Shown: piece after piece, positions 16,570 to 62,629 of the stretch
Layout of the letters: each line of letters starts with the position of its first letter
Position numbering within the stretch: the first letter of the stretch is position 1
Assembly (NCBI GenBank): GCA_002269645.1
Contig: NIVC01000464.1
Location: 248,001-312,000, forward strand
DNA length: 64,000 nt
Direction: 5' to 3'
From: Macrostomum lignano
Taxonomy: Eukaryota
The notes under the pieces: model-generated
The model's input: only the letters and a program-made list of their open reading frames with translations
What the model was told of the DNA's origin: nothing
The model's database searches: none
Program-made: the position numbers and the translations under genes

Positions 16570-19500
16570 TCAGAACCTCGCCAGCTCCTGCTCAGCAGCC
16601 GCCAGCTTCTCCATCCTGTCTGCCAGGTGTCGCCTCTTTGCGCTAATCAGGGGATTCTCCTCGCGCAGCTTGTCGAACAGCGGCTGCGGCTCCGTGACGA
16701 GGACGATGAGCGACTCGCGCAGCTTGTCAGACATCTTGTGCAGCATGTAGTGCATGACTGCCAGGGTGATGGTGTCCTGCAGGCGCCTCACAGCCACTCG
16801 AATGTACGCCTCGGCTCCTTCCAGCACTCGCTGAGTGTTGCGCTCGACGATGTCCTGCATTGTCGCGGCCGGCTTCTCCGAGCTGATCGAAGCCTCCCCG
16901 CTCTTGCCTCCCGACTCCGGCTTGCGGTGCTGCAGGCGGAGCTTCTCGTTGTACGGCCTGCAGTGGTGGCGATGGCGGAGACGGTTCTGTTCAGCGAAGT
17001 GAGACCCAGGATTCTCTCACATTGGATTTAAGACTGCAGAGAGTATGCAGAGCCCGATTGCTGTTGGGGGCAAAGCCATGGATCAAGCCATAAGGGGCAG
17101 AGCAGCTCGATCAGCGGTAAACGCATCTGACACTCCTGGTTCGATTCCGTGAGCCACCACTTAGCGGGCATTGCATTTAATACCGTTACAGTCTGCAGAG
17201 ACCAATTGACAAACGAACAAGCCATTTATGAATATTTCATTATCGCGTTTTGATATCAGAATATACGTTGTGATTTAACCTCAATAGATTGTTATAGCTT
17301 TTCAGATATTGTAAGCTGCTCGTAGAGTAACTGAGAAGAATTATTGCACCGGTTGCTACGAGTACCAGCTGGACCAGCTGGACAGCTGCTTGAATTGGAA
17401 TTGCAGCTATTGGGCCAGATGATGTTGGTCTATACCCGATCTGACAAGACAGCATGCAGTGTATCTTTTGTATTCCTAGCGCTGCACTCGTATGCTAAAA
17501 TTTAGCGACGAATGCAGATGGTTAAAGGACAAGTCGCGTTGTGGCAATAAAATTTGATGTCACATCTGATCTTGCATCTACGATATGCACCTGCGTGTTC
17601 GAGCGTATACAGCGCTGATATGCAGCACAGGCACAGATTATTAAAGTCAATTCGTATGTATGTGTATTTTACTGCCATAAGCGGATGCTGGATTGCCTGA
17701 CGGCAGCAGCAACGCGAGTCGGCCTCATGCTGAACGCGCGGAAGACGGTAGAGCTTCATGGTGCCCTCCGACCTGCCTGCCCAGATCAACTACCGAGACG
17801 CTGCCGGGGGAAGCAATCATGCTTACCCTCTACCAGCGGTTCCTGTACCTCGGCGTTCTCGTGCCGGGCATTGCCGAGGACCTGATGAGACAACGAGGAC
17901 TAAGCCTGGGCCGCGTTTCGTTCTTTGCGCTCCGTGCTACATTCTGTGGCCCTGGATGACGGGCTCAGGGCTCGGCTGTTTCAGGCAGTCGTTGAGACTA
18001 TCTTGTTGTTACAACGCCGAAAACTGGACCCTGACGGACGCCTTGGAGAGGCAGCTGGACACAGCGCATGCGGCCATGCTGCGTGCGGAGTTCGGAGGGC
18101 GAAACGGTCCAGGTAGCGAGACCAACGCCGCACTCTACACAAGGGCACTTCTGGATGCGGCCCTCTGACCTGCTGCGCGGGCGGCGACTTCGACTGGCAG
18201 GCCACGTCATTCGGTCGGAGGCCCGCTGTCCTGAGCCGACAATCGAAGTGCTGCTGCACAAGCTGTAGGGACCGCGCAGGCGAGGCCAAGGGCGAACGGC
18301 GAACGGCGAGATGTCCTGACAGGCTTTTGACCGATGCTTACTCCCGGACCAAGCTGGAGGTTTTTATAGAGCTATGGTCCAGAGACGCGCTCTCTGACTT
18401 CTCCACCCTTTCTGGCTACTGCGTGACTGACGGGTGAAGTATTTTGTTGTTGTTATTGCTGTTGGTTTACTGCATTCAATTTACTACATGTGAACACAAA
18501 CATTCGATATGTGCATGTAAAGTAATTTAAATTCAATATCCAATTTGACTTACAGTGTGTAGGATAAAGTTACAAGTCAAGAAGCCAAGCAGATAAAACA
18601 AAAATGGTGTTCAAAACTACATTATAAATCTGCACTTACTTGTCCTTTTCCAGCAGGAAAATTCTGTCCTGCGTGAAGACGAACTCCTCCTCCGTGAAGA
18701 TGTTTTTGATTTGCTCCCTGGCAAGATCTACCTGCCCGGTTCTGATGCCCTCGCACACCTCCTTGATGAACTGGTTGAACGTTGGATAGTCGCCAAAGAC
18801 AAGATCAGCGAGGGTTCGCATCGTCTCGTCGACCTCCTGATTGACAGAGACCAAGAAATTGCTGCAGGGCTCCCGGACCAGCTTGAGAAAGTGGTTGCGC
18901 ACGAGCCGCTCCACCACAGGGTACACGTTGTCGAATCCTGGCAGCTCGCAGCCCCTCTGCTCCTCGATGTCCTTCTTGGCCGCCTCCCACATCGCAGTCA
19001 CTGTGTAAACGGGAATATAGCATTGCAACTGATAGTGATTCTGTGCTGTAATGTCACTGTGTAAACGGGAATGGCATTGCAACTGATAGGGATTCTGCGC
19101 TGTAATGTCACTGTGTAAACGGGAATGGCATTGCAACTGATAGGGATTCTGTGCTGTAATGTCACTGTGTAAACGGGAATGGCATTGCAACTGATAGGGA
19201 TTCTGCGCTGTAATGTCACTGTGTAAACGGGAATGGCATTGCAACTGATAGGGATTCTGTGCTGTAATGTCACTGTGTAAACGGTAATAGCACTGTAATT
19301 GATAAGAATTCTGTGCTGCACTGTCAATGTGTGAACGGGAATAGCATTGTAACTGATAGGGATTCTGGGCTGTACTGTATGTCAAGTGAATTTAATTTAG
19401 CCCTCCCACCATGAATTCTATATTTACTGCGAGATAGAAGGAGTACATCTCAAGAACCTCTAAAAGTTCCGGTGTTTTGTATTTTAAACAAAGCAGCAAA

Positions 19501-21458
19501 AAGTTTCTCTTTGCGCATATGGAGATACGAGTCTTCAAATCATTAGCCATTTAATGCGGCTGTTACATGTACGCCCTGAGTACTAACTGAATAACTTAAT
19601 CATATTTTAGAACTCTTCATCTAATTTCTCATAAATGCAGCATCTTATATTAAAAAACTCATATCGATAAGAGCGTATCGGTCGTACCGTCACTGCGATC
19701 TGAGAAGGCGCACTGCTCAATCTCGTCAGCCAGTGTCTCCCAGTGCTTGCGGCAGCGACCAAACAGCCTGTCTGGCTCGTGACGATGCGTTCCAGTGGAA
19801 ACATTGGCGAAATCCGTTGCAAATTTGTTGAGCATCCTTGCTAGAAGGCCTTTCATTTCGTCATTGTGTGCAGGAGGACCTTCGCCGATGGATTCCAGTT
19901 GTTTGCATATATCCTCTCTTTTCACCTTTCAAAAACAAAATTATTTTTGCTATTTACCAAAACAAACCATTTTAAGTGCACTGTAGTCATACTGTTGCAA
20001 TTACCAAAACAGTATATACCTGGATCTCTCTCATCAGCTCAGGGATGTTGTGCTTGATAGCGTCGTAGAGCTCGCTGCTCAGCTTCACCGCCAGAGTCTT
20101 GGTTCCGTACTCAAATTTGTCCAGAGCCCTGAAGTGCCGATGGGTCCGGAAGAACACTTCCTCCTCCCTAGCAGCCTGCTGCAGGCTCATGTTGTCCTTC
20201 AACTGCTGTGGTGTTCGGCACCTCACGGAGACATAGCCCTTCTTCAACTTAATCTTCCGGTTTTGCATGAGCGCCAGGACTTCTGATTCGGAGCCTGGGT
20301 TGACCAGGTCAGGACAGGTGAGAACTCCGATTGTCCGCTTCGATTCCGGGTCGACCTCTTTGGCTAGGGAGAGAGCCTCAACTGTCTCGATGTCTACGTG
20401 GCACGGGATGACAACCAGTATGATGACTTCTGGCTTTTGTATATAACTCATGATGAGAGATTTCGTTATGCCCGCCACGGCATATCCAGAATCGGCAGAG
20501 AATCTGTTTAGTAATTTGTGCATACAACATTGCAGTTAAAACATGCGAGTGTTCGGCTAGTTGTACTCTAACATGTAGAATAGATAAAAATGAAAAATGA
20601 CTCACCGAGCAATCCCCGGCAGATCAATCAGCGTCAAGTCGGGCGCCTCGGGGCTCTCAACCCAGAGCTCAATGATGTGCTCAGATATCTCCCCAGGAGA
20701 ACTTGTCATCTCATTTTGAGCCTCTCTGATTGCCTGTCCAATCTCGGGGGATGTGTTGAGGTTCTTTTCTTGATTCTGTCCTGACTTCGTTTGGTATCTG
20801 GAGAGAACAAAGTCATTACTTATGTTTCAGTTTTTTGGCGGCTGGATTCTGCTAAAACAAAATGACCCCCAGCTGTCGTTTTGTGTTCATCAGGGTGGTC
20901 TACTCGTTAGCACATTGCAGAGTATGTACATCCATGTATCATGCCTCCAATATATCAGAAAAAGCCTTACTTAATCCGTGCCGACCATCCAGGCTCATCC
21001 CTGCTCCGCATGCTGAGCATTAGAGGGCACCGGGTTACAATGCCTGTTCCGCGTGGAAGCTCAACGCCCGAAATGGCCTCGAGGACGGAAGACTTGCCGA
21101 CAGACTGGTCGCCCACAACTGCGATCGCCGGCAGCCGAATGTCCCTCTGCAAGCCTTGAGCTCGAAGACAGTCGATGGCATCCAGGCAAGGCTTCAGGCA
21201 TTCTCGGAACGCCTTTCCCAGCTCAGGAGAGAATGCGCCGTCTTCGGCGGCTGCCTGGTCAGATGACGGAATTGGTTGCGATTTTCGTCCGCCGTATTCA
21301 ACACTGCTGCCACTGCTGCTTCCTCCGTCGATGCCCGAATCGCCATAAGTTGATGCGGAGCTTCTGGAGCCAAAACCTTTTCCATCGCTATCCACTTGCA
21401 ATTTTTGATGCGACGAAGCCTGGCTTCCACTTCGAAAGGCTTGCGACTCTGTTTGCAT
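16570..21458 (-). CDS. MX: Mx-like dynamin-family large GTPase, paralog 1 (MxL-1); 6 exons, 716 aa, apparently intact
   Basis: Exons 21458-20971, 20797-20606, 20503-20020, 19925-19688, 19000-18640 and 16957-16570; all GT-AG with consistent phases; sum 2151 nt. G1 [10 protein letters not shown]2 [12 protein letters not shown]3 DLPG, G4 TCPD, stalk RGCELPGF and FTQD, C-terminal GED. No PH domain or PRD. Confidence 0.9.
17680..18462 (+). mobile_element. RTE-type LINE 3' fragment in MxL-1 intron 5
   Basis: [51 protein letters not shown] motifs across frameshifts; (TTG)n-like tail; absent from the MxL-2 intron. Confidence 0.8.
19001..19390 (-). repeat. 54/56-bp minisatellite (about 7 units) whose unit contains the exon-5 splice acceptor, MxL-1 intron 4
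   Basis: Minus-strand unit CCCGTTTACACAG|TGACATTACAGCACAGAATCCCTATCAGTTGCAATGCCATT; the true acceptor CCCGTTTACACAG|TGACTGCG is the last unit. Confidence 0.92.
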
Positions 21459-25892: not shown

Positions 25893-26105
25893 TGAAGCGG
25901 CTTGCAAGTGGAAGCTTGAAAAGCAGCAAGCGAGCAAAAGATCTTGTGTATATTTGTTTAAGCATAGTCTTTATACTTGAGAGAATAGGGAGGTGTGAGT
26001 CAGAGCGAACTGGCTGGCTGGGCAAAGCTCCCCAGCAGCCAGGCGTGCAGGGGCCTGTGCACAGGCGGGCCCCGCACTCGACCGTGCACCAGTCTGGCCA
26101 CCACA
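25893..26105 (-). repeat. 3' LTR of Gypsy element (213 bp)
   Basis: Direct repeat of 29988-30198, with 4 substitutions and 2 single-base indels by manual comparison. Confidence 0.92.
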
Positions 26106-26126
26106 GAGCTCGCCCCCAGCACCGAG

Positions 26127-29957: not shown

Positions 29958-29987
29958 TGCACGAAATGGCTGCGTAGGGCTCACCAA

Positions 29988-30198
29988 TGAAGCGGTTGCG
30001 AGTGGAAGCTTGAAAAGCAGCAAGCGAGCAAAAGATCTGTGTATATTTGTTTAAGCATAGTCTTTATACTTGAGAGAATAGGGAGGTGTGAGTCAGAGCG
30101 AACTGGCTGGCTGGGCAAAGCTCCCCAGCAGCCAGGCGTGCAGGGGCCTGTACACAGGCGGGCCCCGCTCTCGACCGTGCACCAGTCTGGCCGCCACA
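29988..30198 (-). repeat. 5' LTR of Gypsy element (211 bp)
   Basis: Direct repeat of 25893-26105, followed on the minus strand by the PBS. Confidence 0.92.
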
Positions 30199-43000: not shown

Positions 43001-44078
43001 TTTCAAGCCGCTGGAGCAGCTCATGGCTGTGTTCCCCGCTGCTAGCGGCTCCCACGTGCCGCCATCTTGGCGCGGACTAATGAGCGATCCCGACTCGCCT
43101 ATTATCGACTTTTATCCCATCGACTTCCGCGTCGATCTCAACGGTAAAAAATTTGCCTGGATGGGCGTCGCTCTGTTGCCATTTGTTGACGAGGCGCGCC
43201 TGTTGAAAACGCTGGAGTCAGTCTATCCCAGCCTCCTGCCAGACGAGGTCGAGCGCAACGTGCGCGGACCCGATCGACTGTTTGTTCGATCGACGCACCC
43301 AGCCGCCGCTCTCATCCAGCGCTTGTATGCTGCCGGCAAGAAGGCTCAGGTGGAAGACATTGAGACCAATGCCGATGCCAGCCTCACCAGCGGCGTTGGC
43401 GGCATCTACAAGCCGGATAAGCTGGCCTATCAGCCTGGCGATGATGTGCCTTCGCCAATTGCTCTGCCACAGTTCAAAACTCTGGCGCAATGCCAGGTGG
43501 CCTCCTGTCGCTATTCGGATCCCGTGTTCCCGCGCGGCCACGTGTTCCCAGCCCGTCCGCTGCCGGGCGCCCGGCCACCGCCGGCCACTCTTCGGCCGGA
43601 GGACCTGGAGCCCGGCCGGCAGTGGATGCCGAATCTTGGCCCGGGCCCCAACGGCGGTCACCGGCCGCGACAGTCGTTCGACTCTGCCGGGCCGATGCGC
43701 CGGATGGCATCGGCTGAGCTGGGCTCCGCTGAGCGATTCAACACCAGCCGGTATGGCGCTGTGCCTCCGCCTCAGCTGATGCAGCAGCAGCACAGAATGC
43801 AGCCTTCGGGTCGGTCTGTGCCGAATTTGCATCACCAGCACAATCAGTGGCCTGGCCAGTCGCCTTACCCGTCTCAGCAGCAGCAGCAGCACTATCAGCG
43901 GCAATTCCAGCAGCCACCACGGCATCAATTCTATCAGCAGCAGCAGCAGCAGCAGTACCAGAGCCCGTATCCGCCGCAATACCAAACTGACTGGAGAAGT
44001 GGCAGAGGCGGCGGCAGAGGTGGTGGCTACAGCGGCGGCGGGGGCGGTCGGGAGTCGCGCCGCTACCAGCCTTACTAA
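40066..44078 (+). CDS. XRN2: 5'-3' exoribonuclease 2; exons 40066-40672, 41192-41697, 41985-42341, 42747-44078; 933 aa
   Basis: [92 protein letters not shown] knuckle [42 protein letters not shown]; intron phases are consistent. Confidence 0.96.
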
Positions 44079-44326: not shown

Positions 44327-45098
44327 TGCCGCAACCAATGATGCATCAATATAATACAACTATGGGCTTTGGATATTGCGGCTGACTGAGCGGTCGGAGA
44401 GTACATGGCTTTTCATTTGATTTTATTTGGGCCGTGGGGATGAAAGTTCAAGGTATCTGCAACCTGGAAAAACCTGATTGTAATTGTGTCATTTTGCTTT
44501 TCACTATATTTGTGTTTCTGTTGTCAATTTTAATTATAATTTATAGCTTTGATAGGCAAGTTCCTCTTGTGTAGCCGCCGCTCAAATCCAACTTGGTCTA
44601 TTGTTCATCTTCTATTGTTTTCTCTGCTTTGTTAATCTGTTACGCTACTGACAGTTGTCCGTCTAATTTGATCGTTAATTTATTAGCTGCTAAAGCAGAT
44701 TCAATTCGTATGCTGTTTTGTGTGGCTTTTTTATTTCCTGTTTTAAATTTGTTTTTCTTATCCAACATGTCTTTTATTTTGCGAAGTGTAAAATAATATT
44801 GATGCGCCATGTGTGTCATTTCCGTTCGAGAATAAACCGATGCGAGATGCCATGTCGCTCAGTTGAATTCGATCAGCTTGTGCTAGGCATCATGGATGTG
44901 TAACCACTTTTTGAGTCGTTTAATTCTATTTATTTCTAAGTTATTTTTAACTCAATCCAACTAGCGCAAATAAGGATCGCTGTAAGGATTATTTAGGGAA
45001 ATTGAGTATTTCACTTTAAAATAATGAACCAATTGTGCGACCGGGTCTCAATTGAGTTACTCGTAGCTATCAGCCTCGAAGACTGCAGCCTTGTGTAA

Positions 45099-45630
45099 CC
45101 TGCACCACCTCTCCAACCCTTCAGTCAATCACTGAAGCCTCCACTGAGACCTGAACCACCTCTGCAGCCCCTCAGTCAGTCACTGAAGCCTCCATTGAGA
45201 CCTGCACCACCTCTGCAGCCCCTCAGTCAGTCACTGAAGCCTCCACTGAGACCTGAACCACCTCTGCAGCCCCTCAGTCAGTCACTGAAGCCTCCATTGA
45301 GACCTGCACCACCTCTGCAGCCCCTCAGTCAGTCACTGAAACCTCCACTGAGACCTGCACCACCTCTGCAGCCCCTCAGTCAGTCACTGAAACCTTCACT
45401 GAGACCTGCACTGCCTCTGCAGCCCCTCAGTCAGTCACTGAAACCTCCACTGAGACCTGCACCACCTCTGCAGCCCCTCAGTCAGTCACTGAAACCTTCA
45501 CTGAGACCTACACTGCCTCTGCAGCCCCTCAGTCAGTCACTGAAACCTTCACTGAGACCTACACTGCCTTTGCAGCCCCTCAGTCAGTCACTGAAACCTT
45601 CACTGAGACCTACACTGCCTTTGCAGCCTT
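45099..45630 (+). repeat. 51-bp minisatellite (about 10 units) between the convergent XRN2 and ETHE1 3' ends
   Basis: Unit ACCTGCACCACCTCTGCAGCCCCTCAGTCAGTCACTGAAGCCTCCATTGAG. Confidence 0.95.
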
Positions 45631-46000: not shown

Positions 46001-47024
46001 TCAGTCTTGCAAACCGCACACCATATTCGCTGGCAGGGCCGCATCGATCTGCTTCGGATAGGGCAGGTTCAAGTTGTTCATGATGTCAACGAACTCGCTT
46101 TTCGTCTTAGTCAGCCGGCTGTTGAACTTCTTCTCCTCGGCTACTGTGGTGACAGTCTGGCCAGTGTAGTCGTGAGCAGGATAGAGCTGGTAGTTGTCAG
46201 GCAGGCTGAATATCTGCGAGTGCACGGACTCGTATAGGCGCTCTGGCGAGCCCTGCTGGAAGTCGGTTCTACCGCAGCCGCGAATGAGCAGCGCGTCGCC
46301 TGTGAACGCCATTCGGTGGCTGTGCAGCACGTAGGTGAGGCAGCCGTCCGTGTGGCCGGGCGTCGAGCGGGTCTCCAGTTGCAGCTTGCCAAAGTCGATC
46401 TGAAACCATTAAATTCTTCTCTATGATTCAATGATTCTCTATGAGAGAGCCCAGTTACAGATAAAGGTCAATGAAGATTTTCCTTCAGTAATTCCTCGTG
46501 GAGAGCCTCATACAGTTATTAATGAAGGTCAATGAAGATTTCATTTAGTTATTCCTCGTGGAGAGCCTCAGTTACGGTTGAAGGTCAACTGATTTCCTTC
46601 AGTGTCTTGCTGAAAATTTGCTAAAAATCTTATCTATCATCTAAGGATCAGTCTCGTATCCAGGTACTCGTGATTTCGGCAAATTGAAATTTTGATGGAT
46701 GTGAAAGAATGAGAAATTCACCTTATCCCCATGCTTCACTCGGACATTAGCTTTCGCTTGGCTGGCCTCCGCGATGACGCTTTGACACCCGGGAATCAGC
46801 GACTTCAGCTTGCCCGAGCCGGTCACGTGATCAGCGTGCACGTGCGTGTTGATGGCGAATTTCAGGACCAGGCCCAGCTGCTTAACGATGCCAGCGTCCC
46901 GATCGACAGTTTCAATGACGGGATCGATCAGCACGGCCTGTTTGGTGACCTCGCAGGCCAGCAGGTACGAGTAAGTGCTGCTCTTGGACTCGAACAGTTG
47001 GCGGAAAATCAGCCCGGCGGACAT
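46001..47024 (-). CDS. ETHE1: Persulfide dioxygenase (metallo-beta-lactamase fold); exons 47024-46722 and 46399-46001; 233 aa
   Basis: [79 protein letters not shown]; phase-0 GT-AG intron. Confidence 0.95.
46440..46692. repeat. Dispersed repeat with about 57-bp internal units, ETHE1 intron copy
   Basis: GAGAGCCC(C)AGTTAC...GAAGGTCAATGAAGATTT units plus a shared tail GCTGAAAATTTGC...CGTGATTTCGG.AAATTGAAATTT; direct homolog at about 47820-48116. Confidence 0.8.
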
Positions 47025-50116: not shown

Positions 50117-53100
50117 GTCAGACGCGTTACCCTCTTGAGCTGCTCTGCCCTAAAAATTTACGTGTAGTCGAAAAAAGCAAATTAAATTTCATTTAGCTAC
50201 ATGCATACTCGTATTGTGTACGCAGAAACCGCAGGAATTCGAAGACAGCCATAGCTAGACAACAGTCTTGGTGTCGAGTTACCAATTTTTGGCAGGACCC
50301 ACCCGCCATATTTGTATATTTGATGCACGCGTCTTAGAGAAGCCTGTAGATATGCATCAGAACGCTTGCCATACTTGGCCGCAAGTTACATTACTAGAAT
50401 ACTAACGGAGAGAACTGATAAAAACGCGCACTGACCGCTGAGGGGCATGAATACACAGTACTGGATGCATAACAGTGAGCGCGTGCATCTGCAAAATCTA
50501 AATATGAAGCATTGCAAAATAAAACCACGCACCATTCTGACTTTGCTATTTATTTATAAAAGCTATGCGAGCTCCAATTTAAGATTTTCAGGGTATAAAA
50601 ATTTACTGCCGGTCAATAAGGCTAACGTGTTTGTTATAGCTTCCTTTGCATATAATCTTGAAACTTGTGTGCCGCAATCCTGCCGTTATGGCCCAGAGCT
50701 CCGGAGCAAGTCAAAGCGGTGAGGAATCCTTCGAGCCAGAACTCAACAAAGCGTTTCGAGATCGGCTCAAACCATGCCTGGACGCCATAGACTGTCTGCG
50801 GGCTCAGGGTCTGCAAAAGGACGTCCGACTGCCGGCTATTGCCGTTGTCGGCGACCAGTCGGTGGGCAAGTCGTCCGTGCTCGAATCCATCTCTGGCATC
50901 GACTTGCCCCGCGGTCTGGGCATCGTCACCCGCTGCCCGCTGATGCTGAGCATGCGGAACCGTGAGGAGGCCGGCTGGTCTGCCAGAATCAAGTGAGGAT
51001 CAGGAGTTGCCTGCTCAATGTCTGCAACGACTTTTGATTGAAATTGAATTTTTATTGCATTGATTATGACTTGAATTTATGATTACAGATATAAAACAAA
51101 AACAGGCGAGGGCAGGGAGAAGAAACTTACTGGGGCAAGCGAAGTTGGCCAAGCGATACGCGATGCTCAGAACGAGATGACCAACTCGAGCGGAGAGGTC
51201 TCCGAGCAGCTAATCGAGCTGTGGGTTGAGAGTCCCGAGTCTCCGGACTTGACACTGATTGACCTGCCGGGAATTGCCAGGTAATATCGGATTTGAAATG
51301 CTTACATTTTTGTCTAGCAGCAGCAGGTGTGTGCTTTGCATGCTATTCGGCGACGTTGCTTGCAAAGCAGGACACAGTTGTAGCTATTAGTAGGGAGACT
51401 ACCTGCGAAAAGAACTGGCGTCTAAAGTCCCAAACCCTGCTGAATGACGCCCATCCATAGTGTGAGAAGTTCAGTAATGATCAGAGTAAGGGGGTGGGTA
51501 CTATGGTATGGTAGAGTAGCTTAGTTGGTTAACGCGTCTAACGTTCGAGCCGGCCATTCCGTGCGCGGCCACGTGATCATTCGGAGTGCAGTGCTAATTT
51601 TCGGCGGTGCTCAAAGACACCCTAGGGGCTGTGGGTTGATTGTCACCTTGATTTGCGGCGATGCTCACAGACACCCTAGGGGCTGTGGGTTGACTCTCAC
51701 CTTGATTTGCGGCGGTGCTCACAGACACCCTAGGATCTTGTCAACTATAGACAAGCGTTAGCTGATGACACTTGTTTTCTTGCCATACAATTGATTTAAT
51801 TGGCGAAGTCTGGCGAACTATCATCCAGGTACTCCATCGACGGTGGCGGAGCCATAGCCGGTCTAACCAAGTCCCTCATCCTGAGCTACATTGAAAAGGA
51901 AGAAATTTTAATACTGGTTGTCATCCCGTGCCACGTAGACATCGAGACAGTTGAGGCTCTCTCCCTAGCCAAAGAGGTCGACCCGGAATCGAAGCGGACA
52001 ATCGGAGTTCTCACCTGTCCTGACCTGGTCAACCCAGGCTCCGAATCAGAAGTCCTGGCGCTCATGCAAAACCGGAAGATTCCGTTGAAGAAGGGCTACG
52101 TCTCCGTGAGGTGCCGAACACCGCAGCAGTTGAAGGACAACATGAGCCTGCAGCAGGCGGCCAGGGAGGAGGAAGTGTTCTTCCGGACCCATCCGCACTT
52201 CAGGGCGCTGGACAAATTCGAGTACGGAACCAAGACTCTGGCGGTGAAGCTGAGCAGCGAGCTCTACGAGGCTATCAAGCACAACATCCCTGAGCTGATG
52301 AGAGAGGTCCAGGTAATTCGCCATGACACCCGGGCAAATAAAAACATTGGAGGCGGGGGCAAGTAGGTCAGTTGTAAACGTGCCCGGCTCTGACTCGGTT
52401 CGATTCTGTGCGCAGCCACATCTATTTGATCAAGAGAGTGTACGAGCCTGACGATTAGAAAGTCCGTGTGAGCGTGTGTATGACGATTTCGCCAAAGGCG
52501 TTGCGCCAAGGCGCCTGCAGCCCTCCTCAATAAATAATTCAAGAATCAAAGTGATGCTAGGACCTGTAGCTAAAATTTCAAAGCCGTACGTGCCTCGGTT
52601 GTTTCGTTAAAATGCGCACCTGTGTCCTGAAAATCGCGGCCAACAGCTTTTTTATTATTATTGTGGTCACCCATGCTCATTTCCACACACGTACGCTACT
52701 GCCTTTTTAGATGAAACGCGAGGATATCTGCAAAAAGTTGGAAACCATGGGCTGCGGACCGCCCGACTCGATTGAAGAAATGAAGAATCTGCTGGTCAGA
52801 ATGATCAATAAGTTCACGACGGACTTCGCCAATGTTTCCACTGGAACCATCGTCACGAGCCAGACAGGCTGTTTGGTCGCTGCCGCAAGCACTGGGAGAC
52901 ACTGGCTGACGAGATTGAGCAGTGCGCCTTCTCAGAGCGCAGTGACGGTAAGACCGATACGCTCTTATCGATATGAGTTTTGTTAGGATATGAGACGCTA
53001 TTACAATAAAATAGGTGAATAGTTCTAAAGACTACTAACTTATCGTCGGACGAGTATCAGGACGTATCGGTTGCACTCATGGCTAATGATTTGAGGACCA

Positions 53101-53263
53101 GAAATTTAAATACACTTTACTCCGAAACACCGTAACTTTTAGAGGTTCTTGAGATGTACTCAAAAAGTACTCATGACTCATGATTACTTCTTGAGATTTA
53201 CTCATGAATTTAGAATTCATGATGACATAGCTCGATTAAATTATGCTGGCACATCTACATCTG

Positions 53264-54179
53264 CAGCACAGAATCCCTATCAGTTGCAATGCCATTCCCG
53301 TTTACACAGTGACATTACAGCACAGAATCCCTATCAGTTGCAATGCTATTCCCGTTTACACAGTGACATTACAGCACAGAATCCCTATCAGTTGCAATGC
53401 TATATTCCCGTTTACACAGTGACATTACAGCACAGAATCCCTATCAGTTGCAATGCCATTCCCGTTTACACAGTGACATTACAGCACAGAATCCCTATCA
53501 GTTGCAATGCTATTCCCGTTTACACAGTGACATTACAGCACAGAGTCCCTATCAGTTGCAATGCCATTCCCGTTTACACAGTGACATTACAGCACAGAAT
53601 CCCTATCAGTTGCAATGCTATATTCCCGTTTACACAGTGACATTACAGCACAGAATCCCTATCAGTTGCAATGCTATTCCCGTTTACACAGTGACATTAC
53701 AGCACAGAATCCCTATCAGTTGCAATGCCATTCCCGTTTACACAGTGACATTACAGCACAGAATCCCTATCAGTTGCAATGCCATTCCCGTTTACACAGT
53801 GACATTACAGCACAGAATCCCTATCAGTTGCAATGCTATATTCCCGTTTACACAGTGACATTACAGCACAGAATCCCTATCAGTTGCAATGCTATTCCCG
53901 TTTACACAGTGACATTACAGCACAGAATCCCTATCAGTTGCAATGCCATTCCCGTTTACACAGTGACATTACAGCACAGAATCCCTATCAGTTGCAATGC
54001 CATTCCCGTTTACACAGTGACATTACAGCACAGAATCCCTATCAGTTGCAATGCTATTACCGTTTACACAGTGACATTACAGCACAGAATCCTTATCGAT
54101 TACAATGCTATTCCCGTTTACACAGTGACATTACAGCACAGAATCCCTATCAATTACAATGCTATTCCCGTTAACGCAG
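53264..54179 (+). repeat. 54/56-bp splice-acceptor minisatellite (17 units), MxL-2 intron 4
   Basis: 16 copies of CCCGTTTACACAG|TGAC (one with ACCG) precede the terminal acceptor CCCGTTAACGCAG|TGACTGCG at 54179/54180. Confidence 0.95.
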
Positions 54180-54926
54180 TGACTGCGATGTGGGAGGCGG
54201 CCAAGAAGGACATCGAGGAGCAGAGGGGCTGCGAGCTGCCAGGATTCGACAACGTGTACCCTGTGGTAGAGCGGCTCGTGCGCAACCACTTTCTCAAGCT
54301 GGTCCGGGAGCCCTGCAGCAACTTCTTGGTCTCCGTTAATCAGGAGGTCGACGAGACGGTGCGAACCCTCGCTGATCTTGTCTTTGGCGACTATCCAACG
54401 TTCAACCAGTTCATCAAGGAAGTGTGCGAGGGCATCAGAACCGGGCAGGTAGATCTTGCCAGGGAGCAAATCAGGAACATCTTCACGGAGGAGGAGTTCG
54501 TCTTCACGCAGGACAGAATTTTCCTGCTGGAAAAGGACAAGCAAGTGCAGATTTACTAATGCATTTTTGAACGCCATTTTTTGCAACTTTATCAAACACA
54601 CTGTAAGTCAAGTTGGATATTGACTTAAATTAATTTATGCATGCACATCCTGAATGTTATAAGTTAAAGAATACCAGTTCATATGTAGCTAGTTAAATTG
54701 AATGCAGTAAAAATGGCGTACATAGGTGCTGATGACATGCCTTTTATTATCTGTGCCGGTGCTGGATACACTCGAACACGCAGGTGAATATCGTAGATGC
54801 CAGATCAGATTTAGCATCAAATTTTAATGCCATAACGCGTCTTGTTCTTATATATTTGTGTATTCGTCACTAATTTTTTAGCGTACCGCTAGGAATACAA
54901 GAGAGTGGCTGCAGGCTGTCTTTCCA

Positions 54927-55905
54927 GGGGTCTATGAAATTTGCTTGCGAGAAGTTTGCTTGCCGAACTTTGCTTGCCGAACTTTGCTTGCAGTAAATTT
55001 GCTTGCCGAGGTTTGCCACCTAAAGTTTTCTTGCGGAACCCTAAAGAAACTATTTTTGAGCTCTTGTATTTCTAATTTTCATTTTCTAAGATTGTTGGAA
55101 GTCGCTTATAGTGTTATTATTTTGTACGAGGATATGATGGATTTGAAAAGCCTTAACGCAGAAACTTTCGAAACTCCACGGAACTTTCGGTTCTATTTTA
55201 ACTTTTGTTCCTCGGTGACAAGTACACGACACTAGTACTCGTGCAAATCCGCCAGTCCAAGTGCGTTTACATTTTTATGTACACTAATTAGTATATGCAA
55301 TATTATACATTAGCATCACTACAATTATCATACCTGCTCAATCGTGCTGAAATCAGGAACTACAAAGATTTATACTGTTACTGATCCCTTTCTTCTACCT
55401 ATACTAAATCTCTAATCATTCTATATAATAAATTCTTAGAATGAAACTCTATAAGCCTAGTTTGAAAGCTTAGTGTCAAGTCAGTTTACGTCGACGCTGA
55501 TAAGAATCTACTTGCAAAGCATCTGTGGCAAGTAATAATTGACTGACCAACTTCACAAGCAATCAAAACAAGCAAGCAGACAAGAAAATAATTCGGCAAG
55601 TTAAAACCATGCAATTGTGATTGCGAATTTCTAGGAAGCGAACATCAAAATTCCGCAAGCAAACTTCGGCAAGCAAATTTCCGAAAGCAAATTTCCGCAA
55701 GCAAATTTCTGCAAGCAAAAGTCCCGCAAGCAAACTTCGGCAAGCAAAAGTCCCGCAAGCAAAAGTCCCGCAAGCAAACTTCGGCAAGCAAACTTCCGCA
55801 AGCAAAGTTCCTGAAAGCAAACTTCGGCAAGCAAAGTTTGGCAAGTAAACTTCGGCTAGCAGACTTCGGCAAGCAAACTTCCCGCAAGCAAACGTCGTAC
55901 TCCCC
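54927..55905. mobile_element. Foldback-like non-autonomous element (979 bp) with about 13-bp subterminal tandem repeats, MxL-2 intron 5
   Basis: Imperfect TIRs GGGG..TA.GA..TTTGCTTGCG; inverted arrays of GCAAGCAAA(C/T)TTC at about 54940-55015 and 55646-55890; flanked by TTTCCA / TTGCCA. The MxL-1 intron has a single TTGTCA at the homologous site. Confidence 0.75.
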
Positions 55906-58399
55906 TTGCCAGATCAGGAATAAACCAACATCATCTTGAACTGCATGCTATCACCGAATAAATTGAAAGTACGCGAGTGCTAAAAAATGTCCGATTATTG
56001 AGGCTAAGGATTGAGCGATCCAGCTGGTAGCAACAATAATTTTCACAATTACTCCACGAGCAGCTTACAATGCATGGAATATATATTTGTTTGAGTTTGT
56101 GAGCCCCCCCCCGTGAGTCGAGAGTTTGCCCCCAATCGGGCTCTGCAGACTGCAGTATTTTAACAATGCCCGGTTAGAGAATCCTTGGTCTCACTTCGCT
56201 GAACAAACCCGTCACCGCCATCGCCACCCCCGCAGGCCGTACAACGAGAAGCTCCGCCTGCAGCACCGCAAGCCGGAGTCGGGAGGCAAGAGCGGGGAGG
56301 CTTCGATCAGCTCGGAGAAGCCGGCCGCGACAATGCAGGACATCGTCGAGCGCAACACGCAGCGAGTGCTGGAAGGAGCCGAGGCGTACATTCGAGTGGC
56401 TGTGAGGCGCCTGCAGGACACCATTACCCTGGCAGTCATGCACTACATGCTGCACAAGATGTCTGACAAGCTGCGTGAGTCGCTCATCGTCCTCGTCACG
56501 GAGCCGCAGCCGCTGTTCGACAAGCTGCGCGAGGAGAATCCCCTGATTAGCGCAAAGAGGCGACACCTGGCAGACAGGATGGAGAAGTTGGCAGCTGCTG
56601 AGCAGGAGCTGGCGAGGTTCTGATCGAGCTGATTCATATCGGTTGGTTGACAGAAGAGTGACCGTATTGCAATAAGCGTACATAATATTTATAATCAAAT
56701 AGGTAAAATTTATCTAATTATTAATCAAAGTTTTAGTGTCTATTTTTCTAGTTTATGTTTGACAAATTTAATTTATCTTCTCGTGGGTGGCAATAATATT
56801 CGGAAAACCATTACGCACAACTTCTATTCTCTACTCTTGGCCGTACACATAATATATTCCAGGTGTTGGCCGACTTTATTAACCGAATGCCACATACAAT
56901 AGACTATTTTCAATTTACCCTCGAGCTCCCGTGCAACAACCCGACGTCAAGCGGCTTTTCCGCTTTTGATAGCCACCCACTATACGGCTCTGAATGTGTT
57001 TCTTGACCTAATGAATTAAATATTTATTTATTCGCGTTGTTTAATATATTTATATTCTTGATGTTAAGTCGTGTAGCTAATTCTTGCATGTAGCAATTTT
57101 GAATCAATTTGATGAGTTATTTGTTTGTTTAGAGATCAGAGATTAATTTATACAGGGGTCGGTAACCTTCTTTCACCTCAAGTGATTAAAATTTGAATGG
57201 GACGGGCAGAAAGGTCCCTTAGTGACTGAAGGCCAGTCACAGCTGAAGCTGAAACTTCAGCCAATTGAAGTTCACTAGATGAGATATTGTGACTCTATGC
57301 TAAACAACTGGAGACACTTCCTATCTTCCTATAACTTGTCATTACGCCTAAAACTTGAAAGCCTTTGATGCCCGTAGTCACAAAGCAAAAAAGTACCTGT
57401 AATTACAGTTGTCCCTTCACTAGTTTTAGTTGTCCCTGAGTCCCTCTGCTTAAAGCTTCTCAGCAAGTTAGATTACTTTTACAAAGGTAGACGCACACAT
57501 TACTACTAGTGGTTCACTAAGTATATAGACTGATTAAGTTTGATAGCTGGGCACTTGCCTTTTAAACCTTATTAATAAATAATTCGCTGATCTAATTCTT
57601 CAATTTCAACCTATTGATAGCAGGTACGCTGTAACAGCAGAATAATTAATTCTAAATGACCGTCTGCTCCTGATTTTTAAAAAGTCAATTAGCTATATAT
57701 ACTGTCAAGTTTCTCTCAACGAAAACATTGTTATAGCGATCATAGCATTGGAAGTCATTTATAAGCCTGCAGCATGACAGATCAGCAGCATTTCAAATGG
57801 TTCGGCAATCCGCCATTTCGATGCTCCTTTAAATTCCTTAGCCAGCGCCTCCCAGAGTTGACGACAGCCGGCCAACTTACCAGCTCGTTTGACACCGCTG
57901 ACGACGCCTCCGTCTGCAGCGACGCCGCGGCGCAGCAGGACTTGATGGACTCTGAAAGTGCTGTGCCGTCTGGTTCGCAGGACTTCCAGCTGAGCATGCA
58001 GAAGATTGGCTGGTTCTATCAGCGGGACAAAGGCTGCTACTCTCGGTGTCCGAAGAATCAGCTGAAGGAGGACATTCTTCAGAAACCTAACTAACCAAAA
58101 CATCGAGTTTAAATGTTTAAAAAGTTTAAAGGCTCTAAAAAATTGCCCTCATTTTGTCGAATGTCAATTCTTGTTAGACCTCCACCGCGCTACTGAGGCC
58201 ACTTATACATGCAACGTGTAAGCTTAAATAAACTTTCTACAGGCTAATAATTTTTAGTTATGCTTACAATGTAGGCAAATTTTACGTGAAAGACAAGGCA
58301 GAGACGAGAATTTTGATGTAATGTACATAACTTTTAGAACAAAAAATACGCTGTCAGAGTCCTTCGATGGCAGCATCACATGCAGCTAGAGCAAACCTC

Positions 58400-59050: not shown

Positions 59051-61043
59051 CCAGAACGTTGCATCCAGGCCATTGTAGATCCTATACCTGCATGTACAGT
59101 GAGACGTACTCTCAGAAAAAAGTAGCAGTTGCACTGAATTTAATGACTTGCCCCTTAGTAAATGTTTTAGACGGAATATGGCGCCAAAGTGAAGCCCATA
59201 ATTTTAGTTCTGTGCCCCGCCCCCTCACCATGAAATATTTTTATTTTAAAATTTTGTTTTTGTACGTATAGTTTTGATTAATCTTGATTGATAATTTACA
59301 CGTATGTGTAGGAAATTGTTTTGAAACTAGCTCTTCGTAATCGCGGTCTAATAATGGTGAGTGGTTTTCAACATTGTGACATTTCGGTCTTAAGTTAATT
59401 AGCCACGCGTGTTTAGGGAGCTCCCATCTCTCCTCCTCGATAACCGCGATTGTGGCTTTCTACTATTACTAATAGAAACCAGAAGAGGAACATTCCTTCT
59501 GCATTCATGACAGTCGCCCTTGAATTACAGAATAGAAGTTGTACGACAAAGTGGAGCGGTCGGCATGGAAACCGAACAGCTGCAGAAGTGCACGCGTCAG
59601 CGCTCATTCAAAGGCTGCTCTACTACAACTCAAGCTACTTTCTTCATAGACGTGGAACATCTCAGTCAGAGTTTTCTTTACTTCGCATTGGGTTTGCTTA
59701 AATCGAAAAGAGATTCCAGGAAATCTGGTGGCCAATTCAAATTCACCAGGATCGTCAATTTCAAATCTCCAACCGAACGTAGGCCTACGTACTATTCCAA
59801 TACCACATCCACAATCAGTTTCGGGGCAATGGGCATACTTACACTTATCCACATGATATTGCATAACTGTTTATACTTTCTGACATACACTCGATCTCAA
59901 TGTATTTACCATATTTAGCATATGGTAGGCCTACTTTTTGTTTTTAGCATGTGTCTGTCAGTGTCAGTGCCATGCCCATGCAGCATTGCAGTCCAGTAGT
60001 AAGTAGCACAGAAAATTTCCAACTGGACCTCCCCCCATTGTCCATATCTGACTCTCTTGATGCGGCTCTCATACCTTGGTTGGAGATTGAGTGCCTCTTG
60101 ATGAATCTTTTGTTTTGCCTTGGACTTTTAATTCATATCTATGAGTATGAGTGTAGGCCTATGAGGCTATGACTAGATGTATTTTTATAATTTAGCCTAG
60201 CCTAGGCCTATCCCAATATAGGCCTAATAATGCTGAATGCTGCACTACAGGGCCTAGCCGCCTAGATGTAAATATGCATAAGCTAGGCCTACATATGATA
60301 GAAGTAAAAAATAAATTCACTTTGGGTTTGGAATTGCATTGCAACATTAAAAAGTAATAAAAATAATAATCTAGTTGTTTTTTTTCTTTTGTATTTTATT
60401 ATTATCATTATTAAACAGATGCTAGTGCAGGGGTCAGCAAAGCATCTGGCGAAATCCAAAAACGTGGGATAAAACAGTAAAACAAATCTGCGGACATTCG
60501 ATGGAAAGTAATGTATCTAAAAAAGGTTTTTGAAAGATAGATAGGTCCTTAGAAAATAGTTCTGGATAAAAACTATTGTTTTCATGCTTTATATTGTTGA
60601 ATAAATAAGAAAAAACCACAAAAAAGCATTTTGAAAGTCCGAGTTGACCGATTTGCAATTTTTTGTTTCACTTTTTTTCATTATTAAACAATTAATTTTA
60701 AGACTTGTAGGCCTTAGAGAAGGCTAATTTTTTTACTACTTACAAAACAGAAAGTAATCTGTGTTTTACTTTTTATTCAATTCAAAAAGATGAAGTATTT
60801 CTAAGGATTTCAAAGTTTTTCTAAAACCATATAAACTCGCAAAAATTCATACTAATATAAAGTGCAAAGTTTGCCAGCAAACATCTTTTTCTAAAAGTAA
60901 ATATATCGCTAATTCCTTGTTGCAAAATAATCTTTAAGTTGTTTTCTTTCATTTAAATATCAACTTGCATAGTATTAGTATTTGTAATATGCCTATATTT
61001 AGACTTAAAAATTTTGGGTAAAAAATGGTACCACAAAATGTGA

Positions 61044-62100
61044 ACCCGGCATCCAAATCAGATGCTTACTGTATGCTCATTAAGCGACGAAGAACAATGA
61101 AATTACACTAAAACATGTATCATCGCGGCGTGTATGCAGGAAAAAAAGAATTTTCCAAATCGCTTCAGTAGAAGCTGAGTAAAATGCAATTTTCCAATCC
61201 TTATGGGAATTCCAATGTGTTACCCGGCTTCCAAATCAGATGCTTACTGTATGCTTATTAAGCGACGAAGAACAATGAAATTACACTAAAACATGTATCA
61301 TCGCGGCGTGTATGCAGGAAAAAAAGAATTTTCCAAATCGCTTCAGTAGAAGCTGAGTAAAATGCAATTTTCCAATCCTTATGGGAATTCCAATGTGTTA
61401 CCCGGCTTCCAAATCAGATGCTTACTGTATGCTTATTAAGCGACGAAGAACAATGAAATTACACTAAAACATGTATCATCGCGGCGTGTATGCAGGAAAA
61501 AAAGAATTTTCCAAATCGCTTCAGTAGAAGCTGAGTAAAATGCAATTTTCCAATCCTTATGGGAATTCCAATGTGTTACCCGGCTTCCAAATCAGATGCT
61601 TACTGTATGCTTATTAAGCGACGAAGAACAATGAAATTACACTAAAACATGTATCATCGCGGCGTGTATGCAGGAAAAAAAGAATTTTCCAAATCGCTTC
61701 AGTAGAAGCTGAGTAAAATGCAATTTTCCAATCCTTATGGGAATTCCAATGTGTTACCCGGCTTCCAAATCAGATGCTTACTGTATGCTTATTAAGCGAC
61801 GAAGAACAATGAAATTACACTAAAACATGTATCATCGCGGCGTGTATGCAGGAAAAAAAGAATTTTCCAAATCGCTTCAGTAGAAGCTGAGTAAAATGCA
61901 ATTTTCCAATCCTTATGGGAATTCCAATGTGTTACCCGGCTTCCAAATCAGATGCTTACTGTATGCTTATTAAGCGACGAAGAACAATGAAATTACACTA
62001 AAACATGTATCATCGCGGCGTGTATGCAGGAAAAAAAGAATTTTCCAAATCGCTTTAGTAGAAGCTGAGTAAAATGCAATTTTCCGATCCTTACGGGAAT
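61044..62100 (+). repeat. 178-bp tandem satellite, about 6 nearly identical units
   Basis: TCCAAATCAGATGC recurs at 61052, 61230, 61408, 61586, 61764 and 61942. Confidence 0.95.
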
Positions 62101-62629
62101 TTGTATGTTTAAATAATAAACTTACGTTGAATACAATTTATTGCAAACGAACTCTACAAAATGCACGTTGTCAAGAGTAACGAAAGTGATAAACAAATAA
62201 AACCTTAAAATAATGTTAAATATGTTGTAGAATTATAGAGTGTAACATTATAAGATAGTTAAAGTTAATAAAATACATTATTATAGCTTTTCAATCATTT
62301 TCATTAGACTCATTTTAGGTCGTAATTAAACTTACCGTTTTAACAAATCATTTTATTAAAAATAAAGCTATACGAAAATAATTTGTGCTTTAATAGACTT
62401 TTTAACGTTTTAAAAACTTGAATAAATTTATTTTATAGCTTTATTGCTTTCAAATTGCCAAAAAACGAATTTTCATAAAACTTGCCCCCGATTTTTGGAT
62501 TTCCCCATCTACTAGTAAAAAAGTAGAGTCTAGATTGTCCAGCCAAGCTGCAGACTGAGAGGTAAGGTGTCAAAGGCCCAGAGGCAGAGCCTATGGCCTA
62601 TAAGTAAATGAGAAAAATATCAATCAAAG

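What the first reader, a model, noticed from the sequence alone, without database searches (positions are those of the whole stretch)
53264..54183. Intronic minisatellite made of tandem copies of the Mx exon-5 splice acceptor: six in-frame alternative 3' splice sites
Seen: each 54-bp unit contains the pyrimidine-rich acceptor and the first 4 exon bases (CCCGTTTACACAG|TGAC). There are 16 such sites before the terminal acceptor at 54179/54180. The unit is a multiple of 3 and has no stop in the exon frame ([18 protein letters not shown]). The last six upstream sites (first at 53855/53856, exactly 324 nt upstream) are therefore in frame and would insert 1-6 Cys-containing 18-aa repeats into the stalk, about 13 residues before the RGCELPGF (MxA YRGR/L2 oligomerisation) region. 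The upstream sites end in the ACACAG acceptor used by MxL-1, while the terminal one has drifted to AACGCAG. Inference: a repeat-encoded, copy-number-variable splice-isoform dial on an antiviral effector. It requires the exon-4 frameshift to be an error or polymorphic.
Basis: partly seen in the sequence, partly recalled or inferred. Interest (0 to 1): 0.85.

Follow-up and report, generated by a model that had tools for sequence, protein, structure and literature searches.

The report
Splice-acceptor minisatellite in flatworm Mx gene
A 54-bp tandem repeat at the end of an intron in a Macrostomum lignano Mx-like gene copies the intron's splice acceptor 16 times, but the available gene models use only the last copy, so it looks like an ordinary intronic repeat and not an isoform switch.

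Summary
Window 53264-54183 holds 16.9 copies of a 54-bp unit. There are 16 upstream ...ACACAG|TGAC sites plus the terminal acceptor at 54179/54180, and the last six upstream sites are in frame.

The window is Macrostomum lignano contig NIVC01000464.1. The gene is a published type of flatworm Mx orthologue, BOX15_Mlig022940g1.

The "splice-isoform dial" is not supported:
- RNA-seq-guided GenBank models of this copy and of an intact second copy (g2, 17.9 units) both join exon 4 to the terminal acceptor.
- The inverted paralogue in the window carries the same array, but all its upstream sites are out of frame and run into a stop.
- The array grows in 218-bp blocks (54+54+54+56), which is not a multiple of 3.
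- Ten of the 16 upstream sites here also give premature stops.
- This copy has a 1-bp deletion in exon 4, so every acceptor gives an immediate TGA.
- About half of the introns in the Mx paralogues examined carry minisatellites.

The closest known kind is the donor-side minisatellite that spans an exon-intron boundary (F7, IFI6 6-16, CBS, LMNB2, PDGF). This array is the acceptor-side mirror image. Low-level use of the nearest pseudo-acceptors in g2 remains untested, because no reads could be examined.

The parts
53264..54183 (+). 54-bp minisatellite, 16.9 units with lengths 54,56,54,54,54,56,54,54,54,56,54x6. It fills the 3' 74% of intron 4 of MxL-2 and reaches 4 nt (TGAC) into exon 5.
53855..54179 (+). 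The last six units. Their upstream AG|TGAC sites (AG ends 53855, 53909, 53963, 54017, 54071, 54125) are in frame with exon 5. The region ends with the terminal acceptor AG at 54178-54179.
53309..53800 (+). Ten distal pseudo-acceptors (AG ends 53309 to 53799). With the phase-1 join, each reads into a TGA after the next 56-bp unit (stops at 53420-22, 53638-40, 53856-58).
52711..52947 (+). MxL-2 exon 4. It has a 1-bp deletion (CC here, CCC in copy g2) at 52847-52848. This shifts the frame so that the exon ends in phase 0 and the next codon is the TGA of whichever acceptor is used.
52948..54179 (+). MxL-2 intron 4 (GT...AG, phase 1 in the intact copy), 1232 bp.
54180..54540 (+). MxL-2 exon 5 ([23 protein letters not shown]...), followed by a GC donor (GCAAGT). 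The annotated CDS of BOX15_Mlig022940g1 ends at 54182, on the TGA at the start of this exon.
50688..56623 (+). MxL-2 (BOX15_Mlig022940g1), an Mx-like dynamin GTPase gene with 6 exons: 50688-50992, 51089-51280, 51829-52312, 52711-52947, 54180-54540, 56236-56623.
18997..19378 (-). The same 54-bp array (7.0 units) at the same intron-4/exon-5 boundary of the inverted paralogue MxL-1. The terminal unit is 56 bp, so all five upstream AG sites are out of frame.
16570..21458 (-). MxL-1, an intact 716-aa Mx-like gene with 6 exons: 21458-20971, 20797-20606, 20503-20020, 19925-19688, 19000-18640, 16957-16570.

Best explanation
This is a neutral, or at most mildly costly, intronic minisatellite. It arose by tandem duplication of a roughly 54-bp segment made of the last 50 nt of intron 4 and the first 4 nt of exon 5 of a Macrostomum lignano Mx-like gene. 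Any duplication spanning that boundary leaves the exon intact and pushes a copy of the acceptor into the intron. The array then grew by unequal exchange in 54-bp steps and in 218-bp four-unit steps.

The upstream copies are pseudo-acceptors. The spliceosome uses the terminal copy, which is the only one followed by the real exon 5. If an upstream copy is used, the outcome depends on the gene:
- In MxL-2, the six proximal sites would add 18 aa each.
- In MxL-2, the ten distal sites would give a premature stop.
- In MxL-1, all sites would give a premature stop.
- In the copy in this window, an exon-4 frameshift gives a stop at the splice junction whichever site is used.

Shown: the anatomy, the frames, the presence of the array in the paralogue and in the second copy, and the annotated junctions. 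Inferred: the mode of origin and the silence of the pseudo-sites.
For: Array and frames.

The 218-bp higher-order period (54+54+54+56) fits best, with 97% matches and 0% indels. Growth therefore ignores the reading frame.

The window is NIVC01000464.1:248001-312000. The GenBank CDS of BOX15_Mlig022940g1 runs from 50688 to 54182, ending on the TGA at the terminal acceptor. The conceptual splice reproduces the 406-aa product exactly.

The intact copy g2 (L003) has 17.9 units with the same last six. Its 655-aa product reads ...SERSD|[10 protein letters not shown], so it uses the terminal acceptor. It also uses the non-canonical GC donor of intron 5, which argues that the model is transcript-based. 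The GenBank annotation is a StringTie/TACO RNA-seq-guided assembly (PMC5730564).

MxL-1 carries the array at the same boundary, with all upstream AGs at 56+54k nt, ending in ...AIFPFTQ*. Exons 5-6 of MxL-1 versus MxL-2 show 11 synonymous and 2 non-synonymous differences (dN/dS about 0.05-0.08). They are therefore translated in the frame that only the terminal acceptor provides.

Base rate: simple and tandem repeats make up 15% of this genome. The window has 25 arrays covering 8.7%. About 16 of 30 introns in six Mx-paralogue gene copies carry minisatellites, and the homologous intron 4 of a more distant paralogue is filled by a 9-bp x255 array.

The repeat peptide has no Pfam match above threshold, and its only database hits are weak (22-37% identity) matches to unrelated repeat proteins among 1.84 billion representatives. 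There is no Rfam match and no unusual RNA fold.

Precedent: donor-side minisatellites that span an exon boundary use only the authentic site or the one or two nearest pseudo-sites (PMC1557585).
Against: No RNA-seq reads could be examined.

The pseudo-acceptors are nearly identical to the terminal one. They differ at positions -4 and -7 only, and MxL-1 itself uses the ACACAG form. Nothing in the sequence explains why they would be silent.

In the AlphaFold model the junction lies at a loop/helix boundary (residues 402-407, block pLDDT 68), so an insertion there is not obviously destructive.

The negative protein word search is weak evidence. A control-like query that should have found exact matches returned nothing.
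Confidence: 0.68

Rival explanations
1. Leaky or constitutive use of the one or two pseudo-acceptors nearest the exon, as at the IFI6 6-16 and CBS donor-side minisatellites. In the intact MxL-2 copy (g2) this would give minor isoforms with +18 or +36 aa at the L1-like loop of the stalk. In MxL-1 the same leak would give premature-stop transcripts. Any functional consequence would be incidental.
For: The pseudo-sites are near-identical to the authentic acceptor, and MxL-1 uses ACACAG as its real acceptor. The six proximal sites of MxL-2 are in frame and open. The junction maps to a loop/helix boundary in the model. Precedents exist in which two proximal pseudo-sites are used (PMC1557585). Annotation filtering could hide such isoforms.
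Against: None of the seven gene models from two assemblies contains an insertion. The two exon-proximal units have diverged most, including loss of the Cys, with no sign of coding constraint. In MxL-1 the same leak would be purely wasteful, yet the array persists there.
Confidence: 0.2
2. The array is a selected, copy-number-variable dial that sets how many 18-aa Cys-containing repeats are inserted into the Mx stalk, tuning oligomerisation or antiviral specificity.
For: There are six in-frame sites. An intact copy exists. Copy number differs between the copies: 16.9, 17.9 and 7.0. The insertion point is next to loops that form an oligomerisation interface in human MxA. That last point rests on recalled knowledge of the MxA stalk structure and was not tested here.
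Against: The in-frame property is absent in the paralogue with the same array. The higher-order unit of 218 bp shifts the frame. The copy-number difference between g1 and g2 is at the 5' end, among out-of-frame units, so it would not change the possible isoforms. Unit-to-unit changes in frame A are mostly non-synonymous. An open frame over 18 codons is expected by chance with p of about 0.42 per frame, and two of the three frames are open. All annotated transcripts use the terminal site.
Confidence: 0.06
3. The acceptor array attracts spliced-leader trans-splicing, which is common in M. lignano. This would give 5'-truncated mRNAs starting at exon 5 that encode a stalk/GED-only fragment.
For: 38.8% of M. 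lignano genes are trans-spliced. The array offers 17 acceptors in a row. An ATG lies 9 nt into exon 5 (MWEAAKK...).
Against: No evidence at this locus. No such short protein appears among the models seen. This is pure speculation.
Confidence: 0.03
4. The array, or its length, is an assembly artefact of a repeat-rich, redundant long-read assembly.
For: The assembly is redundant and repeat-rich. Copy g2 has an odd extra 5' unit that is identical to the variant of its own penultimate unit.
Against: The same array, with the same unit order, is found on two contigs that differ by 2.3% in flanking sequence. A differently organised array sits at the same boundary in the paralogue.
Confidence: 0.02

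Closest known systems
Human F7 intron-7 37-bp VNTR (PMC1557585)
   Same: The terminal monomer of the minisatellite spans an exon-intron boundary by exactly 4 exon bases, so the splice site is reiterated identically in the intron. Physiologically only the site abutting the exon is used and the others are silent pseudo-sites. Copy number varies.
   Different: In F7 the reiterated site is the donor (5' splice site) and the array follows the exon. Here it is the acceptor, with its pyrimidine tract, and the array precedes the exon. F7 has 5-9 copies of 37 bp. This array has 7-18 copies of 54 bp with a 218-bp higher-order structure. Splicing behaviour has been tested for F7 and is untested here.
Human interferon-inducible 6-16 (IFI6) and CBS intron-13 minisatellites (as summarised in PMC1557585)
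   Same: [quoted passage not shown] 6-16, like Mx in vertebrates, is an interferon-induced gene.
   Different: They lie on the donor side, and pseudo-site use is demonstrated by transcripts. No transcript with an insertion is known here.
LMNB2 and PDGF intronic minisatellites (as summarised in PMC1557585)
   Same: The monomers are long (81-100 bp), the arrays have 10-18 copies, and only the authentic site is used.
   Different: They lie on the donor side and are in mammals.
Animal Mx proteins; M. lignano Mx orthologues (PMC11789081)
   Same: The host gene has Dynamin_N, Dynamin_M and GED domains. It matches human Mx1 and Mx2 structures at about E=1e-104, against about 1e-50 for dynamin-1. M. 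lignano is reported to encode at least six Mx proteins.
   Different: Flatworms are not known to have an interferon system (general knowledge, not checked here). Antiviral activity of these proteins is untested.

Membership tests
Minisatellite spanning an exon-intron boundary and reiterating a splice site (F7 / IFI6 6-16 / CBS / LMNB2 / PDGF type) | Head-to-tail array of several to tens of monomers, each tens of bp long, inside an intron | tested here: met
   54 bp x16.9 with 96% matches. 17.9 units in copy g2. 7.0 units in MxL-1.
Minisatellite spanning an exon-intron boundary and reiterating a splice site (F7 / IFI6 6-16 / CBS / LMNB2 / PDGF type) | The monomer next to the exon includes a few exon bases, so the full splice-site sequence recurs in every monomer | tested here: met
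   The array ends at 54183, 4 nt into exon 5. 16 upstream ...ACACAG|TGAC sites.
Minisatellite spanning an exon-intron boundary and reiterating a splice site (F7 / IFI6 6-16 / CBS / LMNB2 / PDGF type) | The reiterated site is the donor (first monomer spans the exon-intron junction), as in all five described cases | tested here: not met
   Here the last monomer spans the intron-exon junction and reiterates the acceptor. It is therefore filed as a variant, not a member.
Minisatellite spanning an exon-intron boundary and reiterating a splice site (F7 / IFI6 6-16 / CBS / LMNB2 / PDGF type) | Only the exon-abutting site, or that site plus one or two neighbours, is used in mature mRNA | tested here: inconclusive
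   RNA-seq-guided GenBank models of g1 and g2 use the terminal site. No reads were examined, and the annotation was filtered against repeat-overlapping transcripts.
Minisatellite spanning an exon-intron boundary and reiterating a splice site (F7 / IFI6 6-16 / CBS / LMNB2 / PDGF type) | Copy-number polymorphism among alleles (VNTR) | tested here: inconclusive
   16.9 versus 17.9 units between two 97.7%-identical copies in one assembly. Whether these are alleles or duplicated loci is unknown, and no population data are available.
Mx subfamily of dynamin-like GTPases | GTPase domain, middle domain (stalk) and GED, without PH or proline-rich domains | tested here: met
   Pfam Dynamin_N 5e-41, Dynamin_M 4.5e-47, GED 3.4e-12 and nothing else significant. 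The AlphaFold model has mean pLDDT 83.
Mx subfamily of dynamin-like GTPases | Closer to Mx than to other dynamin-superfamily clades | tested here: met
   PDB best hits are Mx2 and Mx1 at about 1e-104 over the full length, against dynamin-1 at about 1e-50. Database hits after M. lignano are Mx proteins of fish, lancelets and acorn worms. The published phylogeny places M. lignano proteins in the Mx clade.
Mx subfamily of dynamin-like GTPases | Antiviral activity or inducibility by infection | not testable with these tools
   No expression or functional data were accessible.
Regulated tandem alternative 3' splice sites giving in-frame isoforms | Two or more of the tandem acceptors are used in mature mRNA | not testable with these tools
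   No read-level data. None of the seven gene models has an insertion.
Regulated tandem alternative 3' splice sites giving in-frame isoforms | Frame preservation conserved across paralogues or orthologues | tested here: not met
   In MxL-1 all upstream sites are out of frame (+2) and end in a stop. The higher-order unit of 218 bp is not a multiple of 3.

The most novel reading that the evidence does not exclude
In the intact MxL-2 copy, the exon-proximal pseudo-acceptors are really used. This would produce a ladder of Mx isoforms with 18-aa insertions at the L1-like loop of the stalk, whose range depends on the repeat structure. It would be a natural acceptor-side counterpart of the IFI6 6-16 minisatellite, in an innate-immunity GTPase of an animal without interferon.
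Probability: 0.12. Interest if true: 0.6.

Novelty: new variant of a known kind. Interest (0 to 1): 0.3.

Why it matters
As it stands this is a curiosity in a genome where tandem repeats fill many introns. Its main value is as a natural test case for 3' splice-site choice: 17 nearly identical acceptors in a row, of which apparently only the last is used. That mirrors the F7 intron-7 system, which was used to study 5' splice-site choice, and M. lignano is transgenesis-competent, so minigene tests are feasible. If the proximal sites were used, it would show how repeat instability can create length variation in an Mx stalk loop. Nothing found here indicates that this happens.

Tried and rejected
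- Protein word-index search with the repeat peptide in both open frames found no hit. A later junction query that should have found exact matches also returned nothing, so this negative carries little weight.
- An exhaustive HMMER search of 1.84 billion representatives with the six-repeat peptide gave only weak hits (22-37% identity) to unrelated repeat proteins such as bacterial Ig or LRR proteins. The repeat is not a known protein repeat.
- Rfam scan and RNA folding of the array gave no family and z = 0.39. This rejects an intronic structured-RNA cluster.
- Exact-pattern scans of the metagenome and viral collections for the unit found nothing. No eukaryotic genome collection was available, so a dispersed, transposon-borne origin of the unit elsewhere in the M. 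lignano genome cannot be excluded. It is absent from the other ~90 kb of M. lignano DNA read.
Look-up of the contiguous ORF 53615-54559 found nothing.
- A manual branch-point search (yUnAy) in the unit found only TTTAC/TTAAC, 5-6 nt from the AG. That is too close to be informative, so no claim is made.
- The idea that an insertion would break a stalk helix was rejected. The model puts the junction at a loop/helix boundary.
- The inference that the array predates the MxL-1/MxL-2 duplication was rejected as unsafe. The 3' half of the genes, from mid-exon 4 onward, has been homogenised (dS 0.06-0.08, against saturated dS in exons 2 and 4), so gene conversion could have copied the array.

Full report
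**What is in the sequence**

Tandem Repeats Finder reports an array at 53264-54183 with period 54, 16.9 copies and 96% matches. An even better fit is a 218-bp period with 97% matches and no indels.

Cutting the array at every ...CAG|TGAC gives 16 upstream sites plus the terminal one at 54179/54180. The unit lengths are 54,56,54,54,54,56,54,54,54,56 and then six of 54. The 56-bp units carry a TA insertion. Together with the C/T variant at unit position 38 they define a four-unit higher-order repeat (54+54+54+56 = 218 bp).

The array ends 4 nt inside exon 5 (TGAC). The last six upstream sites are in frame and open, reading [18 protein letters not shown]... into [10 protein letters not shown]. 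Five points need correcting:
- Ten of the 16 upstream sites are not usable in frame. Each reads ...AIFPFTQ and hits the TGA that starts the unit after the next 56-bp unit.
- The two exon-proximal units have lost the Cys.
- The junction is 15 residues, not 13, before RGCELPGF.
- The direction of "drift" of the terminal acceptor is uncertain. A more distant paralogue has CCCGACGCAG| at the homologous site, so ACGCAG may be the older form.
- An open frame over 18 codons is expected by chance in about 42% of frames, and two of the three frames of the unit are open.

**Where it is**

The best protein matches identify Macrostomum lignano. The window is contig NIVC01000464.1, positions 248001-312000, of assembly Mlig_3_7.

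The gene is BOX15_Mlig022940g1, called MxL-2 here. It has six exons and Dynamin_N, Dynamin_M and GED domains. It matches human Mx2 and Mx1 structures at about E=1e-104, against about 1e-50 for dynamin-1. M. lignano has been reported to encode at least six Mx orthologues (PMC11789081).

An inverted paralogue, MxL-1 (21458-16570, minus strand), is intact at 716 aa.

**The frameshift**

In this copy, exon 4 has CC where the second copy has CCC (52847-52848). The exon then ends in phase 0, and the next codon is the TGA that begins every repeat unit and exon 5. Every one of the 17 acceptors therefore gives ...SAVT-stop.

That is exactly the 406-aa GenBank product. Its CDS ends at 54182, on the TGA at the terminal acceptor. 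The same frameshifted reading appears in a protein model from the older assembly (P0128). However, the indel is in a short homopolymer and the two assemblies may share reads, so its reality is not settled.

**A second, intact copy**

BOX15_Mlig022940g2 (PAA74204.1, 655 aa) lies on NIVC01000971.1 and is 97.7% identical in DNA. The DV1 assembly is known to be redundant.

Its array has 17.9 units, with one extra unit at the 5' end and the same last six in-frame units. Its product reads ...SERSD|[10 protein letters not shown], so it uses the terminal acceptor. It also uses the non-canonical GC donor of intron 5, which an ab initio model of the same gene avoided. This fits the statement that the GenBank annotation derives from an RNA-seq-guided StringTie/TACO assembly (PMC5730564).

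One caveat applies. [quoted passage not shown]

**The paralogue is the key control**

MxL-1 has the same 54-bp array (7.0 units) starting and ending at the homologous positions of its intron 4. Its terminal unit is a 56-bp one. All five upstream AG sites therefore lie 56+54k nt from the exon, out of frame, and read into the TGA at the exon start. Its internal organisation also differs, with a two-unit alternation. The in-frame run is thus an accident of where the last 56-bp unit sits in MxL-2 and is not a conserved property.

Between the paralogues, exons 5 and 6 differ by 11 synonymous and 2 non-synonymous changes (dN/dS about 0.05-0.08). They are therefore translated in the frame that only the terminal acceptor gives in MxL-1.

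The same calculation shows a mosaic. Synonymous divergence is saturated in exon 2 and the first 135 nt of exon 4, but is 0.06-0.08 from mid-exon 4 onward. Gene conversion has therefore homogenised the 3' halves. The array may have been copied from one paralogue to the other, not inherited from before the duplication.

**Base rate**

Simple and tandem repeats make up 15% of this genome. The window has 25 arrays of period 7 or more, covering 8.7%.

In six Mx-paralogue gene copies, roughly 16 of 30 introns carry such arrays. These usually start or stop 14-100 bp from the splice sites. In the next-closest paralogue, the homologous intron 4 is filled by a 9-bp unit repeated 255 times. The present array is the one case among these that reaches across a splice site.

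**Other checks**
- The repeat peptide matches no Pfam family above threshold. Among 1.84 billion representative proteins it gives only weak matches to unrelated repeat proteins.
- There is no Rfam family and no unusual RNA fold.
- The unit is absent from the metagenome and viral collections.
- An AlphaFold model (mean pLDDT 83) places the junction (D406|V407) at the boundary between a short loop (402-405) and helix 406-421. This is 15 residues before the RGCELPGF loop. An insertion there would not obviously break the stalk, so structure does not argue against isoforms.
- From recalled knowledge of the MxA stalk, these loops correspond to L1 and L2, which contribute to an oligomerisation interface. 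That correspondence was not tested here.

**Most likely explanation (confidence about 0.68)**

This is a neutral intronic minisatellite born from a duplication spanning the intron-4/exon-5 boundary and expanded by unequal exchange. The upstream acceptor copies are pseudo-sites, and the terminal site is the one used.

The closest known kind is the donor-side minisatellite whose first monomer spans an exon-intron boundary. In F7 intron 7 the monomer is the last 4 bp of exon 7 plus 33 bp of intron, and only the authentic site is used. In IFI6 6-16 and CBS the two nearest pseudo-sites are also used. In LMNB2 and PDGF only the authentic site is used (PMC1557585).

The present array is the acceptor-side mirror image, with the same 4-nt exon overlap. 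My literature searches found no described acceptor-side case, but that is not proof that none exists.

**Rivals**
- Leaky use of the one or two nearest pseudo-sites, giving +18 or +36 aa in g2 and premature stops in MxL-1 (about 0.2).
- A spliced-leader trans-splice landing pad (about 0.03).
- An assembly artefact (about 0.02).

All can be settled by counting junction reads in existing RNA-seq data or by RT-PCR across exons 4-5.

**Verdict**

The feature is real and accurately described. Its anatomy is a new variant of a known kind. The functional claim is unsupported, and the paralogue comparison and the 218-bp growth unit weigh against it. Interest is modest.

Noticed in passing
window 16570-21458 (-) versus 50688-56623 (+): The two inverted Mx-like paralogues, about 29 kb apart, are a mosaic. 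Synonymous divergence is saturated in exon 2 and the first 135 nt of exon 4 but only 0.06-0.08 in exons 5-6, and the last 100 nt of exon 4 differ at 1 base. Gene conversion has homogenised the 3' halves. The tract boundary lies at the very site of the g1 frameshift.
   Followed up: partly
window 54541-54546; L003 near 13887: Intron 5 of MxL-2 has a GC donor (GCAAGT) where MxL-1 has GTAAGT. The GenBank g2 model uses it. The older ab initio model (P0002) skips 15 residues to avoid it.
   Followed up: partly
window about 25893-30199: A GC-rich (67-69% GC) retroelement lies between the two Mx paralogues. It has a reverse-transcriptase ORF (RVT_1, E=4.6e-34) on the minus strand and is flanked by ~214-bp direct repeats 97% identical.
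   Followed up: partly
L002 13650-16190 and 16240-16290: In the next-closest paralogue (BOX15_Mlig002592g1), the homologous intron 4 is filled by CCCTCCTCT x255 (2.4 kb). Its exon 5 appears to carry a 1-bp frameshift (RGRELV-DLTTPSQ... instead of RGRELPGFDN...), which truncates the annotated protein to 444 aa. Frameshifted Mx copies may be common in this assembly, either as real pseudogenes or as indel errors.
   Followed up: partly
window 51597-51734; L003 10886-11023: A second, unrelated tandem repeat that also has a 54-bp period (2.6 copies) sits in intron 2 of MxL-2 and is conserved in copy g2.
   Followed up: no
window 45098-45628: A 51-bp x10.4 array between the ETHE1-like and XRN-like genes has an open frame encoding a proline-rich repeat (PLQPLSQSLKPPLRPAP...).
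   Followed up: no
window 61037-62101: A 178-bp satellite, 6 copies at 99% identity.
   Followed up: no
L003 12602-12655 versus 13418-13471: The extra 5' unit of the g2 array carries the same four substitutions as that array's penultimate 3' unit. This could be a long-range exchange within the array or an assembly quirk.
   Followed up: no
window 40066-44078 (+) and 46001-47024 (-): The neighbouring genes are an XRN-type 5'-3' exoribonuclease (XRN_N, XRN_M) and an ETHE1-like metallo-beta-lactamase-fold gene. The same order is kept upstream of copy g2.
   Followed up: partly
tool behaviour: The word-indexed protein search returned nothing for a 124-aa query that is contained exactly in proteins it had returned earlier. 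Cluster 2 also lists four unrelated 38-51-aa metagenomic peptides as members. Negatives from that index should be read with care.
   Followed up: yes
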